A DNA stretch of 63,324 nucleotides, filler included, from Octopus bimaculoides (GCF_001194135.2; 6 parts of 6 records of this genome joined end to end with filler, not necessarily neighbours in it), one strand, 5' to 3'. Shown: positions 53,341 to 59,845, counted from the first letter of the whole stretch. Numbers and translations are program-made. Notes: generated from the letters alone by a model not told the origin.

Positions 53341-53546
53341 TTTGATAGAGGAATAATGAAAGGATAAATCTCACGAGGTGAGATAATTTCGTATCAGGGG
53401 AGTTAACTCTAAATTTTAACACAGGAAGCTTTCTTGTAAAAGAGATATGAAAGTATAACGATTGTTAATCTGTTGTCTGATGCAACGTGCGATCAATTCT
53501 ACAACAAAGATCTACAAAAGTATATAAAAAGGCAAAAGTCAGAAGG

Positions 53547-54404
53547 ATGGCATCTGAATCTGCGATCCAGCACTTAAGTCAACGGGCTACTCTTGCCGAG
53601 GAAATCCTGGCTAAGTTGAAACACCAACTAGAAGACGTGAAACGTACAGCAATGAAAAATATTGTGAAAAAAGAAGAACAACAAATCCGTCGGGAAAACG
53701 AACGACTGAAAGTCGAGGTGAATGAATACAAAAAGAAGTTAATGCTTGCTGAAATTGGTAACGGGATAAGACAGATACCTATTCCGAACAAAAGAAATTT
53801 AGATCAAATAACTACAGACCAGAGAGTTTCACCAACGAAAGAAGTCGAAGTTAAAAAAGTGAAAGCTGGTCCTAAGCCTGCTGATTCCGTTAATCCCGAC
53901 AAGACTTCTGAGGTGGATGTATCCAAATTATATATCCGGGTAGGATTTGTTAAGTCTGCACAAAAGCACCCTGATGCTGACAAGATGTACGTTGAAGAAG
54001 TCGATATGGGAGAAGAGAAACCAAGAACTGTGGTTTCCGGTCTCGTTGGTGCCGTTCCGTTATCGGAAATTGAGGGCCATTTGTGTGTTTTCTTAAGTAA
54101 CCTGAAACCTGCTAAGCTGCGTGGTGTCTTATCTGAAGGAATGATTCTTGGTGCCAACAACGGAGAGAAAGTTGAACTGTTGAGACCACCGCCAGGAAGT
54201 GTTCCGGGTGACCGTGTCGTGTGTGCCAAATACCCCGGCGAACCGGAACGCGTCATCACTTCCAAAAACAAAATTTGGGACCTCGTTAAAGCAGACGTAA
54301 AAACCAACAACAGCTGCGTTGCTACTTATAAAGGTGAACCACTTATAATCGAGGGCAAAGGACAGGTGACAGTACCATCAGTAGGTGACAGTCAGATTTG
54401 TTAA
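53547..54404 (+). CDS. AIMP1: AIMP1/p43-like protein, copy 1 (N-terminal coiled coil + EMAP II tRNA-binding OB-fold), intronless, 285 aa
   Basis: ATG at 53547 (the ORF-track start 53487 is a GTG), open to TAA 54402-54404. N-terminal heptad region MASESAIQHLSQRATLAEEILAKLKHQL...ENERLKVEV; EMAP II motifs IRVG, KHPDAD-MYVEEVDMGE, RTVVSGLV, NLKPAKLRGVLSEGM, PPPGSVPGDRV, KNKIWD, CVATYKGEP match AIMP1 as I recall it. Confidence 0.93.
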   Translation: MASESAIQHLSQRATLAEEILAKLKHQLEDVKRTAMKNIVKKEEQQIRRENERLKVEVNEYKKKLMLAEIGNGIRQIPIPNKRNLDQITTDQRVSPTKEVEVKKVKAGPKPADSVNPDKTSEVDVSKLYIRVGFVKSAQKHPDADKMYVEEVDMGEEKPRTVVSGLVGAVPLSEIEGHLCVFLSNLKPAKLRGVLSEGMILGANNGEKVELLRPPPGSVPGDRVVCAKYPGEPERVITSKNKIWDLVKADVKTNNSCVATYKGEPLIIEGKGQVTVPSVGDSQIC

Positions 54405-54541
54405 TCAGAACTATAACAACTGGAGAAAATGTTTGTGAAACCAGATTGAAAGTTTTTGACTTTTCCATCTTCCTTCCTTTTGACTTTTTTAAACTGTTTT
54501 TTTTTCTCGCTCTAACTTTTCAGTATCAACACACAAGTATT

Positions 54542-54547
54542 AATAAA
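54542..54547 (+). terminator. Candidate polyadenylation signal of AIMP1-like copy 1
   Basis: AATAAA about 140 nt after the stop, followed by T/GT-rich sequence. Confidence 0.5.
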
Positions 54548-55005
54548 TACTGAATTATTATGGTAATTATGTCTTTATTTTTGCTAGAGGGCTAAGTGTA
54601 GAAATGTGTCAACTGTAATTTGCTATAGTTATGTTTCATGTAATTATTGACAGTGAACAAAAAAATGAAAGTGAATTAAATATACATTTAAAAGATATAA
54701 AAGAATTTATTTTCCCCACCCCATTAAAATATTTCTTACATAATTTTTAAGTAATCATTTTTTCTTACGATCCTTGAATTGTCTGTAAAAACGTGTATTT
54801 TCGTACAGATATTATTGTTTAACCCGAAGTTGGCTATTCTGTAGCAGACAGATCAAAGCCATTACAGCCATGACCATCCCATTTTATTTTCAGGAATAGT
54901 GTACCCCAGACACTATTATCCAACATGTCTCATTTAAGATGCAGAGGAACCAGCTGTAAAAACCCTGCCAAAACAGACAGTGACACTGGCTGCAGTTTTC
55001 TGCCT

Positions 55006-55150
55006 AATGAAAAACAAATATACACATATACATCATCATTTACTGTCCGTTTTCCATGCTAGTATGGGTTGGACAGTTTCAACCCATACTAGCATGGAAA
55101 ACGGACGTTAAATGATGATGATGTATGTGTATATATTTGTGTGTTTCATT
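55006..55150. repeat. Fold-back hairpin made of two inverted retroelement 3' tails ((GAT)n-tail family)
   Basis: 27-bp perfect stem GTCCGTTTTCCATGCTAGTATGGGTTG / CAACCCATACTAGCATGGAAAACGGAC, 8-nt loop 55072-55079, imperfect extension to about 65 bp. Confidence 0.9.
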
Positions 55151-55448
55151 CAGAATGGGCTGGAGCAAGATCAGATTATTCAATGTCCATAATGTGCCAC
55201 TTGTGCATGTATGTACTGGACTAGTTGAGTTACTGATGTCTGGGAAAATGGCAGTCACAGAGAGGTAACAAACTAGATTTACGGTTTCAATTCTCTTGCG
55301 TACAGACAAGATTTGATGTTGAGACTAGAGTCGCGACATCATATTTTGGCCTGCTAGAAATAGTAACTAAATCTTCTAGATGTGCCTGAAGAAAAGAAAA
55401 ATGTGATGGTCATGGCTGTAACATTTCTGATGATAAGTCTGCTCTGTC

Positions 55449-55561
55449 AGAAACAAGTTAAAAGTAATGGTCATTACATAATTACAATTTTTTTCCTTTA
55501 TTGCAGCAATAAAGGAAAAAAATTGTAATTATGTAATGACCATTACTTTTAACTTGTTTCT
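55449..55561. repeat. Perfect 56-bp palindrome with 1-nt loop
   Basis: 55449-55504 is the exact reverse complement of 55506-55561; centre A55505. Confidence 0.95.
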
Positions 55562-55785
55562 TAGATATCACTCTGTGTAAAAACCAGTTTGTTTGGAGCC
55601 CATCCATGGATTTACAATATAGAGTTGTGATGAACTGTAACCTTGGATCCTACCACTAGATTACCTAGAGTTCTTCACTAGTCTAAGTAATATTGTTAGC
55701 TTGGTGTACCAACAGAGAGCTTAATTATTTTATCTGGATTGATAATCCCTCTCTATTTGTTCCATATATATATATATATATATTT

Positions 55786-56027
55786 GACAGGAAGGACCAC
55801 AAAAGAAAGAAAGAGACCTCGATATTATGCAAATAGAGGAATTCATCTGTAAAAATATGTGACACTTATTCAGTAGCCATGATAAAACTCCGAGTTTCGG
55901 ATGCCAGGGTGGGAGGAATTTTCAATTGACCAGATAACTGAAGAGATGTTGGCATGGGCTCCCACCCTGGCATCCGAAACTCAGAGTTTTATCATGGCTA
56001 CTGAATAAGTGTCACATATTTTTACAG

Positions 56028-56029
<2 letters not shown>
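55786..56029. mobile_element. Penelope-like element terminal repeat fragment in inverted (fold-back) arrangement
   Basis: 71-bp arms 55845-55915 and 55959-56029 (70/71 complementary) with a 43-nt spacer; carries the hammerhead motif. Hammerheads and inverted 5'-truncated ends are established PLE features. Confidence 0.6.
55930..55997 (+). ncRNA. Type-I hammerhead ribozyme motif (Penelope-like-element type, probably dimer-dependent)
   Basis: Helix I CCAGATAA (55930-37) / TTATC(A)TGG (55989-97); core CTGAAGA (55938-44); helix II GATGTTGG..CTGGCATCC with G55945:C55975 closure; GAA 55976-78; helix III ACTC/GAGT (55979-87) with a 1-nt loop; cleavage triplet GUU, H17 = 55988. Confidence 0.7.
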
Positions 56030-56058
<29 letters not shown>

Positions 56059-56062
56059 ACAT

Positions 56063-56230
56063 TTTAAATGCACAGATGATTCACTAGAAGCATCTGATAG
56101 CTTTTGTTACCTGGAAGATGTGTTTAGCAGGGCAGGTGATTGCTCTGAAAGTATAGCACCCGGGCTAAGAAGTAAGAACAGGCTGGAGGAAGTTCAGGGA
56201 GCTAATATTACTACTGACAACAAAGGATCA
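56063..56230 (+). mobile_element. RTE-type LINE ORF2 relic
   Basis: Translates DSLEASDSFCYLEDVFSRAGDCSESI then, after a shift, RTGWRKFRELILLLTTK; resembles the RTE post-RT motif FCYLG..GGC...RI..GWxKFREL. Confidence 0.7.
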
Positions 56231-56389
56231 GGACTACAGGACCTTCCTACATGAACAGGAATTGGTAGATAGGTAGAATGAAAAAGAAATCAAAGAAGCT
56301 GAGAGCAAGGTGAAAGGAAAAGAGGAAGAGAATTGAAGAATAAGAAAGTGTTTAAGGAATTAAGCAGAGGTGAAGGAGTAGAAGGGAAA

Positions 56390-56610
56390 ACATTTAAACT
56401 TGTTAGTAACATGGTGCCAAGCTTGAATATAAAACATTGTTCCTTCCATTTCTTTGAGATGTGGATCCTTGGTGGATGGTGACACCACCCACTGGTAAGT
56501 GAGTGATGGAATGGACTGAGGTGTTGGAGTGGGTGGCAACGGATTGGCAAGTTGTTGGCCTGTTTCCTACTGTAAAGGGTGGCACAAAGTTTGCATATGA
56601 CATGTGATCA
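56390..56610 (-). mobile_element. Penelope-like GIY-YIG endonuclease C-terminal relic
   Basis: KEQCFIFKLGTMLLTSLN resembles the PLE terminal motif EQxxIFxLGTLxPxGLN; frameshifted. Confidence 0.6.
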
Positions 56611-57073
56611 GTTATGCTAGCAATACATGGACTATATTATCATCATTTATATTCACCCTTCCATGCTGGTATGGGTTGTGCAATTTATTATGGTCTGATT
56701 CATGTCTTATTCAGAGTTATATGTTACAACTGCAGGTGTGATTTCTTGAGTTGGGTGCTTTTCATATCTTCAATTATCTTATAGAATATACTGGGTGTTT
56801 TTATCATGACACAAGTTCCTGAGAAATCATCTTGCTACTGGGATTACTTAAAGGTTCTCTCCATCCTATACTGTCTCTGTTCACTCATCAGTACAAAGAG
56901 GTTTTCACACTACTGGTTTGGAAAAGAACCAGAGTAAGAATGTGATAGAAGCTGAAAGCAATACTAAGCAGTACACTTCACAAATGTAACAAAGAAATTT
57001 ATCATTTGCTAAATTATGCACTGAAAATGCAGCAAGTCAAGTATGTTCTTTGAAGGACAGTTATATTTTCTGG

Positions 57074-57310
57074 CATCATCAGTTAACATCCGCTTTCCAT
57101 CTAGCATGGGTTGGACGATTTGACTGAGGACTGGCGAACCAGATGGCTGCACCAGGCTCCAATCTGATCTGGCAGTGTTTCTACAGCTGAATGCCCTTCC
57201 TAATGCCAACCACTCCGAGAGTGTAGTAGGTGCTTTTTATGTGTCACTGGCAATGGCCACGCTCAAAATGGTGTTTTTTATGCGCCACCTGCACAGGAGC
57301 CAGTCCAGCC
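57074..57310 (-). mobile_element. Retroelement 3' end with (GAT)n tail (same family as the 55006-55150 hairpin arms)
   Basis: CATCATCAGTTAACATCCGCTTTCCATCTAGCATGGGTTGGAC matches the hairpin arms; continues with GAATGCCCTTCCTAATGCCAACC. Confidence 0.65.
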
Positions 57311-57340
57311 ATATATATGTTTGTGTGTCTGTGTTTGTCT

Positions 57341-57506
57341 CCCACCATTGCTTGACAACTGATGCTGGTGTGTTCACATAGCGGTTCGGCAAAAGGAAAC
57401 GACAGAATAAGTACTAGGCTTACAAAGAATAATTCCTGGGTTGATTTGTTCAACTAAAGGTGGTGCTCCAGTATGGCCACAGTCAAATGACCAAAACAAA
57501 TAAGAG
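57341..57506 (+). mobile_element. SINE family A 3' half abutting the piggyBac relic
   Basis: CTTGACAACTGATGCTGGTGTG..GAATAAGTACTAGGCTTACAAAG..GGTGGTGCTCCAGTATGGCCACAGTCAAATGA. Confidence 0.88.
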
Positions 57507-57745
57507 TACATGGGAGGTGTGGACCACTTAAACTGGCTTATCCAAAGGTATTGCTTCTCTGTTACATCTAAGAAGTGGTGCTTTAGTCTATTCACAAATT
57601 TCCTTGATACTATAATGGTTAATTCCTGGATTGCATATTGTTTTGTAAATAGAAATACTTTGACATTACTAGATTTCAAGAGGTCAGTTACACAAGCTTG
57701 TTTGGAGTTTTTCTCTGATTCCGATCCCAAAAATTTGGGATAGCC
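57507..57745 (+). mobile_element. piggyBac transposase C-terminal relic
   Basis: YMGGVDHLNWLIQRYCFSVTSKKWCFSLFTNFLDTIMVNSWIAY...TLLDFKRSV fits the piggyBac third-Asp motif (MGGVD) and the downstream K(K)W / N(A/S)W motifs; 5' side abuts a SINE tail. Confidence 0.8.
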
Positions 57746-58362
57746 AAAGGTATTTTCTTCAAAAGTAATACTAGAAATTAGATTTTCTACTACTAGACAT
57801 ATACTCTTGATAGAACAGAGGGAGAGAAACAAAGAAAATGTGCCATTAAAANNNNNNNNNNNNNNNNNNNNNNNNNNNNNNNNNNNNNNNNNNNNNNNNN
57901 NNNNNNNNNNNNNNNNNNNNNNNNNNNNNNNNNNNNNNNNNNNNNNNNNNNNNNNNNNNNNNNNNNNNNNNNNNNNNNNNNNNNNNNNNNNNNNNNNNNN
58001 NNNNNNNNNNNNNNNNNNNNNNNNNNNNNNNNNNNNNNNNNNNNNNNNNNNNNNNNNNNNNNNNNNNNNNNNNNNNNNNNNNNNNNNNNNNNNNNNNNNN
58101 NNNNNNNNNNNNNNNNNNNNNNNNNNNNNNNNNNNNNNNNNNNNNNNNNNNNNNNNNNNNNNNNNNNNNNNNNNNNNNNNNNNNNNNNNNNNNNNNNNNN
58201 NNNNNNNNNNNNNNNNNNNNNNNNNNNNNNNNNNNNNNNNNNNNNNNNNNNNNNNNNNNNNNNNNNNNNNNNNNNNNNNNNNNNNNNNNNNNNNNNNNNN
58301 NNNNNNNNNNNNNNNNNNNNNNNNNNNNNNNNNNNNNNNNNNAAAATCGGCATTGTTAAATT

Positions 58363-58678
58363 TTTTCCCCCTTCCCCACCAAATTCTTTAATTTTGACTT
58401 ATTTCCCCAACTCTGACCCTTACCCTAAAACACTAATCCTAACCCTGAAACCCCAACCCTAATCCTAAATCCTAACCCTAAAACCCTAACCGTAACTACA
58501 GAAATGTTTTGAAATTTTTGTCCGTATTAGGAAAAAATAAAATTCTTAATAAAAAATTTTACAAAAATTTTCGTAAATTTTTTTCAGAATCATAATTAAA
58601 TAAAAATATCTGATATACGTAAACAACTAAAATGTTGCAAAATATAAACAACTTGATTTTCGGCAGTAAAAGAGTTAA
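58363..58678. mobile_element. Probable DNA-transposon right end terminating in TTAA
   Basis: ...CGGCAGTAAAAGAG|TTAA at 58675-58678, downstream of the piggyBac relic across a gap; the left end is not visible. Confidence 0.4.
58414..58497. repeat. Degenerate (CCCTAA)n telomere-like array
   Basis: About 12 degenerate units such as AACCCT, AATCCT, AACCCTAA. Confidence 0.75.
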
Positions 58679-58778
58679 TTATTCGGTGTTTTACTTCACA
58701 CCTGGAATAACAACATTCAATTGTTTTTCATTTTTTGACACGTTTATCTTCTAAACAATAACATTTTTTACCAAAAAC

Positions 58779-59639
58779 ATGACGACCGTATCAGCGATGC
58801 AGCACCTTAGTCAACGGGCATTATACGCCGAGGAAATCCTAACTAATTTAAAACAGCAATTAGAAGAAGTGAAACGTACAGAAATGAAAAATATCATGAA
58901 CAAGGAAGAAAAACGAATTCGTCGGGAAAATGAACGATTGAAAAGAGAGGTGGATGAGTACAAAAAGAAGTTAATACTCGCTGAAATTGCTCATGGGATA
59001 AAGCAGGTACCTCTTCCGAACAAAAGAAATTTAGATCAAATAACTTCAGACCAGAGAGTTTCACCAACGAAAGAAATCGAAGTTAATAATGTGAAAGCTG
59101 CTCCTAAGCCTGTGGCTACTATTAACCCCGACAACAAGACCTCCGATGTGGACGTATCAAAGTTAAATATTCGGGTAGGATTTGTTAAATCTGCTAAAAA
59201 GCACCCTGATGCTGACACAATGTACGTGATTGAAACTGACATGGGAGAGGAGAAACCGCGAAACGTGTTGTCCGGTCTGGTCGGTTCCCTTGCGTTATCG
59301 GAAATCGAGGGTCGCATGTGTGTTTTCCTATGCAACCTGAAACCCGCTAAGCTGCGAGGTATCTTATCTGAAGGAATGATTCTCGAAGCCAACGGGGGAG
59401 ACAAAGTGGAACTGTTGAAACCACCGCCAGGTAGTGTTCCGGGAGACCGTGTCGTGTGTGCTAAGTACCCTGGTGAACCGGAACGCGTAATCAATTCAAA
59501 AAACAAAATTTGGGACCTCGTCAAACCGCATATGAAAACTGACAACGACTGCGTTGCTACGTATAAAGGTGAACCGCTTATAATCGTGGACAAAGGACAA
59601 GTAACAGTACCATCACTTGCAAACAAACAGCTTCGTTGA
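58779..59639 (+). CDS. AIMP1: AIMP1/p43-like protein, copy 2, intronless, 286 aa
   Basis: AAAAAC-ATG start, open to TGA; collinear with copy 1 with one 1-codon indel; same motifs (KHPDAD, SGLV, NLKPAKLRG, PPPGSVPGDRV, CVATYKGEP); about 66 of 286 positions differ by manual count. Confidence 0.93.
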   Translation: MTTVSAMQHLSQRALYAEEILTNLKQQLEEVKRTEMKNIMNKEEKRIRRENERLKREVDEYKKKLILAEIAHGIKQVPLPNKRNLDQITSDQRVSPTKEIEVNNVKAAPKPVATINPDNKTSDVDVSKLNIRVGFVKSAKKHPDADTMYVIETDMGEEKPRNVLSGLVGSLALSEIEGRMCVFLCNLKPAKLRGILSEGMILEANGGDKVELLKPPPGSVPGDRVVCAKYPGEPERVINSKNKIWDLVKPHMKTDNDCVATYKGEPLIIVDKGQVTVPSLANKQLR

Positions 59640-59794
59640 ATATAAACATGACGAAGTGGACAGAAGTGTGAGAAAACTGACAGGGGTTATTAAGATTTTA
59701 GTCTCCTCCACCCTCATACTATTTGTTATCGCTAAAAATGTTTTTCTTTTGATTTTTTTTCCATGTTAACACACACACACAAGCACTACAAGAA

Positions 59795-59845
59795 TTATTC
59801 TTTTCTACTCTAGACACAACACCCGAAATTTTGTGGGAGGGAGGC
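59795..59845 (-). mobile_element. SINE family B tail, cut by a gap
   Basis: TTCTTTTCTACTCTAG.CACAA.ACCCGAAATTTT, as at 6668-6706. Confidence 0.7.

What the first reader, a model, noticed from the sequence alone, without database searches (positions are those of the whole stretch)
53547..59639. Tandem pair of intact, intronless AIMP1/EMAP II paralogs
Seen: two single-exon CDSs about 4.4 kb apart on the same strand, about 77% identical in protein. Neither has a stop or frameshift despite that divergence, and I see no similarity outside the CDS. Established: animal AIMP1 (p43) is normally a single multi-exon scaffold gene of the multi-synthetase complex and the precursor of the cytokine EMAP II. 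Inference: a retrocopy was tandemly duplicated long ago and both copies have been kept functional. That would be a lineage-specific AIMP1/EMAP II expansion, possibly serving immune/secreted or germline roles.
Basis: partly seen in the sequence, partly recalled or inferred. Interest (0 to 1): 0.75.

Follow-up and report, generated by a model that had tools for sequence, protein, structure and literature searches.

The report
Octopus AIMP1 single-exon tandem duplicate
Two intact, intron-free copies of the housekeeping gene AIMP1 sit side by side in Octopus bimaculoides; the intron-free form is the normal AIMP1 of squid, cuttlefish and octopus, the second copy is a younger octopus-only duplicate, still under selection here but dead in a sister species: a tidy but ordinary case of gene duplication.

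Summary
There are two single-exon AIMP1 ORFs on the + strand: c1 at 53547-54404 (285 aa) and c2 at 58779-59639 (286 aa). They are 77% identical. The N gap lies between them, not in either coding sequence.

The source is Octopus bimaculoides (GCA_001194135.2), where both are already called genes.

- **Intronless state is old.** Argonauta, a cuttlefish and another decapodiform also have an intronless AIMP1. Limpet and scallop AIMP1 have at least 6-7 exons.
- **No parent found.** No intron-containing cephalopod AIMP1 appeared in two protein searches. The single-exon gene is most likely the only AIMP1 of coleoids, an ancient retrogene that replaced its parent.
- **The duplication is younger.** It falls after the Argonauta split (bootstrap 99.5%; dS 0.49 against 1.1) and before the O. 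bimaculoides/O. sinensis split.
- **c2 has different fates.** In O. bimaculoides it is under purifying selection (omega 0.20, p=0.0013 against neutrality). Its O. sinensis ortholog is a pseudogene, with a 348-bp SINE insertion, two in-frame stops and an N-terminal deletion.

So c1 is the essential ortholog and c2 is a dispensable, faster-evolving paralog. Nothing supports an immune, secreted or germline role. Expression was not testable. This is a new member of a known kind, of low to moderate interest.

The parts
53547..54404 (+). c1: single-exon AIMP1 gene (285 aa plus stop). It is the conserved ortholog and presumably the housekeeping scaffold of the multi-synthetase complex.
   Evidence: ORF. 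PF01588. 91% identical to O. sinensis AIMP1-like P0002 and 75% to Argonauta P0004. Same position next to INO80F in all three octopods. Full-length match to human AIMP1 4R3Z.
58779..59639 (+). c2: younger tandem paralog (286 aa plus stop). It is intact and selectively constrained in O. bimaculoides, and evolves faster than c1.
   Evidence: ORF. 77% identical to c1. Branch omega 0.20, LRT p=0.0013 against omega=1. Polarised changes are 13 synonymous and 11 nonsynonymous, binomial p=6e-4. It has 3 changes at 50 pan-metazoan invariant sites (N72H, E151I, G271D) against 1 in c1. Its ortholog in O. sinensis is a pseudogene.
53742..53882 (+). c1 side of a tract (codons 66-112) with unusually low synonymous divergence from c2. 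Probably an old gene-conversion tract.
   Evidence: pS is 0.13 here against 0.41 in the rest of the gene (Fisher p=0.002). The same holds in O. sinensis (0.11 against 0.38, p=0.004). It is not low against Argonauta (0.54-0.65).
58974..59114 (+). c2 side of the same low-divergence tract (codons 66-112).
54405..54559 (+). c1 3' flank, the presumed 3' UTR, with AATAAA at 54542-54547. It has weak collinear similarity to the c2 3' flank.
   Evidence: Read directly from the sequence. 62% identity over 109 nt to 59696-59799, E=0.001. About 90% conserved with O. sinensis. The poly(A)-signal role is inferred.
59640..59799 (+). c2 3' flank with a faint remnant of homology to the c1 3' flank. The AATAAA is not conserved.
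55453..58648 (.). O. bimaculoides-specific, repeat-rich insert in the spacer, containing the assembly gap 57852-58342. It is not part of either gene.
   Evidence: The flanking anchors are 50 bp apart in O. sinensis. It contains a SINE copy and a piggyBac-like fragment; the third hairpin (55031-55120) lies just outside it.

Best explanation
The window is Octopus bimaculoides chromosome CM046609.1 at about 16.0 Mb.

AIMP1 is the p43 scaffold of the multi-aminoacyl-tRNA-synthetase complex. It has an N-terminal helix that docks to ArgRS and AIMP2, and a C-terminal tRNA-binding EMAP II domain. In coleoid cephalopods it is a single-exon gene. The most likely origin is an ancient retroposed copy that replaced its multi-exon parent in the coleoid ancestor (inferred).

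After the Argonauta lineage split off, and before O. bimaculoides and O. sinensis diverged, this gene was duplicated in tandem. The duplicated DNA segment ran from about the start codon to a little past the stop (shown by tree, dS and shared synteny). A short gene-conversion event later re-homogenised codons 66-112 (inferred).

c1 stayed the conserved, indispensable AIMP1. c2 evolved faster, including at normally invariant residues. In O. bimaculoides c2 is still an open frame under purifying selection, so it most likely encodes a working AIMP1-like protein that is redundant or sub-functionalised (selection shown, function inferred). In O. sinensis the same copy has decayed into a pseudogene, which shows that c2 is dispensable.
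For: - **Source.** Locus L007 is GCA_001194135.2. That accession is O. bimaculoides (bioRxiv 10.1101/2023.05.16.540928).
- **Family.** PF01588. Two-domain match to human AIMP1 4R3Z and to the N-terminal fragment 8J9S. All best hits are named AIMP1.
- **Intronless across coleoids.** Gene spans equal CDS length in O. sinensis (876 nt for 291 aa), Argonauta (900 nt for 299 aa), contig L003 (864 nt for 287 aa) and cuttlefish. tblastn is uninterrupted in each.
- **Outgroups have introns.** Lottia has at least 6 exons in 2.5 kb. Pecten has 323 aa spread over 16.8 kb. Their neighbouring genes differ from the cephalopod ones.
- **One clade.** Coleoid AIMP1s are monophyletic (bootstrap 100%) on a long branch.
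- **No parent seen.** No other cephalopod AIMP1 is in the best 120 hits to c1 or to Lottia AIMP1.
- **Synteny.** INO80F(-) lies upstream of AIMP1 in Argonauta, O. sinensis and O. bimaculoides. Argonauta has one copy.
- **Timing.** dS is 0.49 for c1-c2, 1.1 against Argonauta and 0.09-0.18 between orthologs. NJ bootstrap is 99.5% for duplication after the Argonauta split and 100% for each orthologous pair.
- **Selection.** Branch omegas are c2_bim 0.20 (p=0.0013 against 1), c2 stem 0.35 (p=0.02), c2_sin 0.71 (not significant), Argonauta branch 0.11. The chance of the c2 frame staying open under neutrality is 0.04 since the species split and 2e-4 since the duplication, counting substitutions only.
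- **O. sinensis c2 is dead.** 348-bp SINE insertion, two in-frame stops, N-terminal deletion.
- **Conversion tract.**
Against: - No expression data for either copy could be consulted.
- c2 shares no upstream sequence with c1, so its promoter is unknown.
- Terminal-branch omegas for c1 (0.54 and 0.38) are not significantly below 1, because the branches are short.
- The difference between the c2_bim and c2_sin branches is only borderline (Fisher two-sided p=0.06).
- Absence of a parental gene rests on annotated proteomes and top-120 lists, not on a whole-genome tBLASTn.
- No poly(A) tail or target-site duplications survive to prove retroposition.
- Coleoid genomes are heavily rearranged, so a changed neighbourhood alone is weak evidence of retroposition.
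- Synteny with the decapodiform loci could not be shown within 10 kb.
- Only three octopod genomes were sampled.
Confidence: 0.75

Rival explanations
1. c1 and c2 are surplus retrocopies of a still-present, intron-containing parental AIMP1 elsewhere in the octopus genome, and were retained for a new role (immune, secreted or germline).
For: Both are intronless while outgroup AIMP1s are multi-exon. The proteins evolve faster than canonical AIMP1s: about 44% identity to Lottia, against 50-58% for bivalves, brachiopods and vertebrates.
Against: No other cephalopod AIMP1 protein is in the best 120 hits to c1 or to Lottia AIMP1, although O. sinensis has a RefSeq annotation. The one unnamed candidate, P0015, groups with bivalve-like sequences and not with cephalopods. 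The intronless gene is single-copy and conserved (omega 0.11) in Argonauta, and is present in decapodiforms. There is no signal peptide or other new feature. O. sinensis lives with c1 alone.
Confidence: 0.08
2. c2 in O. bimaculoides is a non-functional relic, a young pseudogene or unexpressed ORF that happens not to have acquired a stop yet, just as its O. sinensis ortholog is already dead.
For: The ortholog is a pseudogene. c2 has changes at otherwise invariant residues. It has no shared promoter region with c1. The AATAAA of c1 is not conserved in c2. The difference from the O. sinensis branch is only borderline.
Against: Omega on the O. bimaculoides c2 branch is 0.20, rejecting neutrality (LRT p=0.0013; 11 nonsynonymous to 13 synonymous changes against about 3.5:1 expected, p=6e-4). 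There is no indel or stop in 286 codons, with P=0.04 since the split and 2e-4 since the duplication from substitutions alone.
Confidence: 0.12
3. c2 arose by a second retroposition of a 5'-truncated c1 mRNA that landed about 1.2 kb downstream of c1, not by DNA-level tandem duplication.
For: Homology starts at about the start codon, extends only weakly into the 3' flank, and is absent upstream. That is the shape of a processed, 5'-truncated copy.
Against: There is no A-rich tract after the presumed poly(A) site of c2. Insertion in the same orientation right next to the source gene would be a coincidence, whereas unequal crossing-over gives it naturally. With an intronless source the two routes leave nearly identical products.
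Confidence: 0.1
4. Assembly artefact: the two copies are uncollapsed haplotypes or a mis-join across the N gap.
For: The piece is bounded by gaps, contains one, and comes from a short-read-based scaffold.
Against: Synonymous divergence is 0.49 and amino-acid difference is 23%. The same two copies occur in the same order and orientation in the independent, ungapped O. sinensis assembly, each grouping with its ortholog at 100% bootstrap.
Confidence: 0.01

Closest known systems
Metazoan AIMP1 / p43 (human AIMP1, PDB 4R3Z; EMAP II domain 1E7Z, 1FL0, 1EUJ)
   Same: The architecture is the same. There is an N-terminal helix (human residues 5-86) and a C-terminal OB-fold tRNA-binding EMAP II domain (human 117-309). 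E=4e-66 to 4R3Z. Core motifs such as HPDAD, NLKPAK, VSGLV and PGD are conserved.
   Different: The gene has a single exon, not about 6-7. There are two tandem copies. The protein is shorter, with most of the Lys-rich linker missing. Evolution is faster: 44% identity to Lottia, where vertebrates keep about 50%. Membership in the complex and cytokine release are untested.
Retrogene replacement / 'orphan' retrogenes (e.g. amphioxus SYCP1, PMC5803294; human orphan retrogenes, PMC3548309)
   Same: A housekeeping multi-exon gene is represented in a whole clade only by an intronless copy at a different genomic neighbourhood, with no parent detectable.
   Different: The retroposition hallmarks (poly(A), target-site duplications) are erased. 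Loss of the parent is inferred from proteomes only. A tandem duplication followed here.
Ordinary tandem gene duplicates with lineage-specific loss (birth-and-death evolution)
   Same: The paralogs are adjacent and in the same orientation. Omega is raised after duplication. There is a short gene-conversion tract. One copy is pseudogenised by a SINE and nonsense mutations in a sister species.
   Different: Nothing unusual. The only unusual aspect is that the duplicated gene is normally strictly single-copy.
Other EMAP II-like / Trbp111 domain proteins (TyrRS C-terminal domain 1NTG, yeast Arc1p 4R1J, MetRS C-terminal domains)
   Same: They share the PF01588 OB fold.
   Different: They score far lower (1e-35 and worse). 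They lack the AIMP1 N-terminal helix, which c1 and c2 have.

Membership tests
AIMP1 (p43) orthologs | C-terminal EMAP II-like domain: tRNA_bind OB fold (PF01588) plus C-terminal extension | tested here: met
   PF01588 E=4.5e-28 (c1) and 1.7e-24 (c2). Residues 89-282 of c1 align to human AIMP1 117-309, and E is about 1e-54 to the EMAP II structures.
AIMP1 (p43) orthologs | N-terminal helical / leucine-zipper region that docks to ArgRS and AIMP2 | tested here: met
   c1 residues 4-85 align to human AIMP1 5-86 (41.9 bits). There is a separate hit to the N-terminal fragment 8J9S (E=7.8e-9). The region is conserved in c2. This is sequence-level evidence only.
AIMP1 (p43) orthologs | Orthology: groups with AIMP1 of other animals rather than with TyrRS, MetRS or Arc1p EMAP II-like domains | tested here: met
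   All named top hits are AIMP1. The tree places coleoid sequences inside molluscan/lophotrochozoan AIMP1.
AIMP1 (p43) orthologs | Physical membership of the multi-synthetase complex; proteolytic release of an EMAP II cytokine | not testable with these tools
   This needs co-purification or cleavage assays. No signal peptide or special cleavage motif was seen by eye.
Retrogene (processed copy) | Lacks all introns that orthologs in outgroups possess | tested here: met
   Coleoid loci have uninterrupted ORFs in genomic DNA. Lottia has at least 5 introns and Pecten a 16.8-kb multi-exon gene.
Retrogene (processed copy) | Lies at a locus unrelated to the parental one | tested here: inconclusive
   The octopod neighbours are INO80F and a proteasome subunit. 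The Lottia neighbour is a TBCK-like gene head-to-head. Pecten and an oyster differ again. Coleoid genomes are globally rearranged, so this is only suggestive.
Retrogene (processed copy) | Poly(A) remnant and target-site duplications | tested here: not met
   None is visible downstream of c1, c2 or the Argonauta gene. They are expected to be erased if the event predates the coleoid radiation, so this does not exclude the mechanism.
Orphan retrogene (parent lost) | No intron-containing parental gene remains in the genome | tested here: inconclusive
   No other cephalopod AIMP1 is among the best 120 hits in two protein searches. The candidate P0015 is excluded by the tree. Whole-genome tBLASTn is not available here. 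The attempt to inspect the TBCK locus failed.
Tandem duplicate retained under selection | Paralog present at the orthologous position in a second species, and dN/dS significantly below 1 on its own branch | tested here: met
   Orthologous c2 is present in O. sinensis. Omega is 0.20, p=0.0013 on the O. bimaculoides c2 branch. But the O. sinensis copy is a pseudogene.

The most novel reading that the evidence does not exclude
c2 is not merely redundant. It is a neo- or sub-functionalised AIMP1 variant specific to some Octopus species, for example a tissue-restricted scaffold of the multi-synthetase complex or a free EMAP II-like signalling protein. On this reading its changes at otherwise invariant residues (N72H in the AEIxNG motif, E151I, G271D) reflect a changed partner or tRNA interaction. 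It would be retained in O. bimaculoides and lost in the O. sinensis/vulgaris lineage. All coleoid AIMP1 would, on the same reading, be an orphan retrogene that replaced a gene otherwise single-copy and multi-exon across animals.
Probability: 0.15. Interest if true: 0.45.

Novelty: new member of a known kind. Interest (0 to 1): 0.25.

Why it matters
AIMP1 is normally a strictly single-copy, multi-exon housekeeping gene.

Two points here are modestly useful:
- A whole clade (coleoid cephalopods) apparently runs on an intronless, fast-evolving replacement copy.
- One genus carries a second copy that is alive in one species and dead in another. That gives a small natural experiment on the dosage and dispensability of a multi-synthetase-complex scaffold.

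It also corrects two annotations:
- The O. sinensis 'AIMP1-like isoform X1/X2' models are a SINE-disrupted pseudogene.
- The cuttlefish AIMP1 model is truncated at the N-terminus.

It opens no new mechanism and does not bear on a long-standing question.

Tried and rejected
1. **Ancestral locus.** Lottia AIMP1 lies head-to-head with a TBCK-like gene. I built a partial Lottia TBCK query from its exons and searched for an octopus TBCK, to look for AIMP1 relics beside it. No cephalopod TBCK was in the listed 120 hits. An oyster TBCK locus has a GDI/Rab-escort gene rather than AIMP1 next to it, so TBCK-AIMP1 adjacency is not general in molluscs. Dead end.
2. **Decapodiform synteny.** tblastx of the Argonauta and Octopus flanks against the cuttlefish locus and L003 found no INO80F or proteasome exons within 10 kb. 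Decapodiform synteny remains undetermined.
3. **Candidate parent P0015.** This unnamed 310-aa protein shares some residues with decapodiform AIMP1. The tree puts it with bivalve-like sequences (97-99% bootstrap), so it was rejected.
4. **Retroposition hallmarks.** A search for poly(A) tails and target-site duplications around c1 and c2 found none.
5. **Duplication boundaries.** A sensitive blastn of flanks found nothing upstream and only a weak hit downstream.
6. **Rfam scan.** All hits are below gathering score and fall on three perfect hairpins in the spacer. They are hairpin-shape matches to miRNA models, not evidence of RNA genes.
7. **Synonymous constraint.** This was considered as the cause of the low-dS tract at codons 66-112. 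It was rejected because the tract is not conserved against Argonauta.
8. **Codon-model script.** The first run timed out and was redone with eigen-decomposition.
9. **Literature.** Nothing was found on AIMP1 in cephalopods or on AIMP1 retrogenes.

Full report
**What is there**

Within the piece 52435-59845 there are two long + strand ORFs.
- c1 has its ATG at 53547 and its stop at 54404 (285 aa).
- c2 runs from 58779 to 59639 (286 aa).

They are 77% identical (220/285, one single-residue gap, E=5e-166). Both carry the PF01588 tRNA-binding domain. Against solved structures, c1 matches human AIMP1 (4R3Z) in two blocks. One is the N-terminal helix (c1 4-85 to human 5-86). The other is the EMAP II domain (c1 89-282 to human 117-309). 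It also matches the isolated EMAP II structures at about 1e-54 and the N-terminal fragment 8J9S.

**The gap**

The N run 57852-58342 lies in the spacer, 3.4 kb after the c1 stop and 436 nt before the c2 ATG. It interrupts no coding frame. The ORFs that one search lists across it are N read as X.

The source locus was recovered as L007: GCA_001194135.2, CM046609.1:15,998,462-16,019,322. A preprint identifies this accession as Octopus bimaculoides (10.1101/2023.05.16.540928). The piece is a contig bounded by two further N runs.

Alignment to the ungapped O. sinensis assembly (L001, GCA_006345805.1) is collinear through the whole region. Window 54950-55452 matches L001 13851-14327, and window 58649-59221 matches L001 14378-14912. 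So window 55453-58648 (3.2 kb, gap included) is an O. bimaculoides-specific repeat-rich insert. The order and orientation of c1 and c2 across the gap are independently supported. The ancestral spacer was only about 1.2 kb.

**The intronless state is ancestral to coleoids**

The best hits to c1 are:
- O. sinensis AIMP1-like (P0002, 91%);
- c2 itself;
- Argonauta hians AIMP1-like (P0004, 75%);
- a set of decapodiform proteins (P0005, cuttlefish-like P0007-P0012, P0013; 49-54%).

In genomic DNA every one examined is an uninterrupted ORF: O. sinensis c1 (876 nt for 291 aa), Argonauta (900 nt for 299 aa), contig L003 (864 nt for 287 aa) and Acanthosepion pharaonis.

Non-cephalopod molluscs differ. 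Lottia AIMP1 has at least six exons in 2.5 kb. Pecten AIMP1 spreads 323 aa over 16.8 kb. Their neighbouring genes are also different.

Coleoid AIMP1s form one clade (100% bootstrap) on a long branch. This fits a single loss of all introns in the coleoid ancestor. Retroposition is the parsimonious mechanism, but it is inferred. No poly(A) tail or target-site duplication survives, and coleoid genomes are heavily rearranged.

**Is there a parental gene?**

None was found.
- Among the best 120 hits to c1 the only cephalopod proteins are the intronless ones.
- Among the best 120 hits to canonical Lottia AIMP1 (cut-off 1.4e-86) there are gastropods, bivalves, a brachiopod and many vertebrates, but no cephalopod.
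- An unnamed candidate (P0015) groups with bivalve-like sequences.

This is negative evidence from annotated proteomes, not from a genome-wide tBLASTn. An attempt to inspect the ancestral neighbourhood through TBCK failed. On present evidence c1 is the AIMP1 of octopus, not an extra copy.

**The duplication**

Argonauta has one copy, between INO80F(-) and a proteasome subunit gene. O. sinensis and O. bimaculoides both have INO80F(-), then c1, then c2. The INO80F first exon aligns between Argonauta and both octopuses.

| Comparison | dS |
|---|---|
| c1 to c2 | 0.49 |
| either copy to Argonauta | about 1.1 |
| c1 orthologs | 0.09 |
| c2 orthologs | 0.18 |

A bootstrapped NJ tree puts all four Octopus sequences together to the exclusion of Argonauta (99.5%). 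It pairs each copy with its ortholog (100%). The duplication therefore falls after the Argonauta split and before the O. bimaculoides/O. sinensis split.

Homology between the copies begins at about codon 4. It extends only faintly (62% over 109 nt, E=0.001) into the 3' flank, and there is none upstream.

Codons 66-112 show pS of 0.11-0.13 between the copies in both species, against about 0.4 elsewhere (p=0.002 and 0.004). The tract is not conserved against Argonauta. This is best read as an old gene-conversion tract.

**Fate of the copies**

In O. sinensis the c2 ortholog (L001 about 14509-15660) is a pseudogene. It has an N-terminal deletion of about 11 codons and two 3-nt deletions. It also has a 348-bp SINE insertion that removed codons for MYVIE, and two in-frame stops (TAC to TAA and TCA to TAA). 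RefSeq models it as 216/215-aa 'isoforms' that splice around the SINE and stop at the first nonsense codon.

A GY94-type branch model that I implemented gives these omegas:

| Branch | omega | Test against omega=1 |
|---|---|---|
| Argonauta plus stem | 0.11 | not tested |
| c1 stem | 0.20 | not tested |
| c2 stem | 0.35 | p=0.02 |
| c1, O. bimaculoides | 0.54 | not significant |
| c1, O. sinensis | 0.38 | not significant |
| c2, O. sinensis | 0.71 | p=0.47 |
| c2, O. bimaculoides | 0.20 | LRT 10.4, p=0.0013 |

Parsimony polarisation agrees.
- The O. bimaculoides c2 branch has 13 synonymous and 11 nonsynonymous changes. The binomial p is 6e-4 against the neutral ratio of about 3.5:1.
- The O. 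sinensis c2 branch has 11 synonymous and 28 nonsynonymous changes.
- The two c2 branches differ only at borderline significance (Fisher p=0.06).

Simulation gives P=0.04 that the c2 frame would stay open since the species split under neutrality, and 2e-4 since the duplication, ignoring indels.

c2 has three substitutions at 50 positions invariant in 17 other animals (N72H, E151I, G271D). c1 has one. At 120 positions invariant in the other cephalopods, c2 has 16 substitutions and c1 has 7.

**Conclusion**

c1 is the conserved, essential AIMP1. c2 is a younger, faster-evolving tandem paralog that is still constrained, and so probably functional, in O. bimaculoides. It is dispensable, as its death in O. 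sinensis shows.

Both genes are already called in the public annotation. I found no paper on cephalopod AIMP1. Retrogene replacement as a phenomenon is well described (PMC5803294, PMC3548309). The finding is a new member of a known kind.

Noticed in passing
L001 14509-15660 (O. sinensis GCA_006345805.1, CM016868.1): The O. sinensis ortholog of c2 is annotated as protein-coding 'AIMP1-like isoform X1/X2' (216/215 aa). It is actually a pseudogene, with a 348-bp SINE insertion, two in-frame stops and an N-terminal deletion. The models splice around the SINE and end at the first stop.
   Followed up: yes
window 57090-57260 (also 55031-55120); L001 14923-15257: Copies of one SINE-like repeat (core ...CCGTTTTCCATGCTAGCATGGGTTGGACG...). 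The same family is the element that disrupts c2 in O. sinensis: 91% identity over 109 nt between window 57139-57247 and L001 14956-15064.
   Followed up: partly
window 55031-55120, 55440-55570, 55845-56029: Three near-perfect hairpins (arms of 41, 65 and 71 nt, 94-99% complementary) in the spacer. The third is flanked by (TA)n runs. They draw sub-threshold Rfam miRNA-model hits, which are hairpin-shape matches only. They could be foldback or MITE-like elements or assembly artefacts. The first is also present in O. sinensis.
   Followed up: partly
window 57510-57740 (+): A short ORF resembling the C-terminal end of a piggyBac-type transposase (Pfam DDE_Tnp_1_7 positions 309-349, E=0.0016, below the curated cut-off). 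It abuts the assembly gap.
   Followed up: partly
window 58415-58490: A degenerate run of telomere-like CCCTAA/CCTAA units just right of the gap, about 300 nt upstream of c2. This is an interstitial telomere-like repeat of unknown meaning.
   Followed up: no
L004 9899-10768 (Acanthosepion pharaonis CAHIKZ030005344.1): The annotated cuttlefish AIMP1 (255 aa) starts at an internal Met. The open frame and the homology extend 34 codons further upstream, to a 289-aa protein starting MASAGILHL.
   Followed up: partly
L005 1-12507 (Lottia gigantea KB203567.1): Lottia AIMP1 lies head-to-head, about 1 kb from a TBCK-like kinase/RabGAP-TBC/rhodanese gene. From my own recollection this is the same arrangement as human TBCK-AIMP1 on 4q24. 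It is not kept in Pecten or in an oyster TBCK locus (L006, L008).
   Followed up: partly
window 53742-53882 and 58974-59114: Codons 66-112 of the two copies have three-fold lower synonymous divergence than the rest of the gene, in both Octopus species but not against Argonauta. This is probably an old gene-conversion tract.
   Followed up: yes
alignment, linker between the N-terminal helix and the EMAP II domain: Octopod AIMP1s, and to a lesser extent decapodiform ones, lack most of the Lys-rich linker present in other animal AIMP1s. Coleoid AIMP1 also sits on a long branch: 44% identity to Lottia, against about 50% for vertebrates.
   Followed up: no
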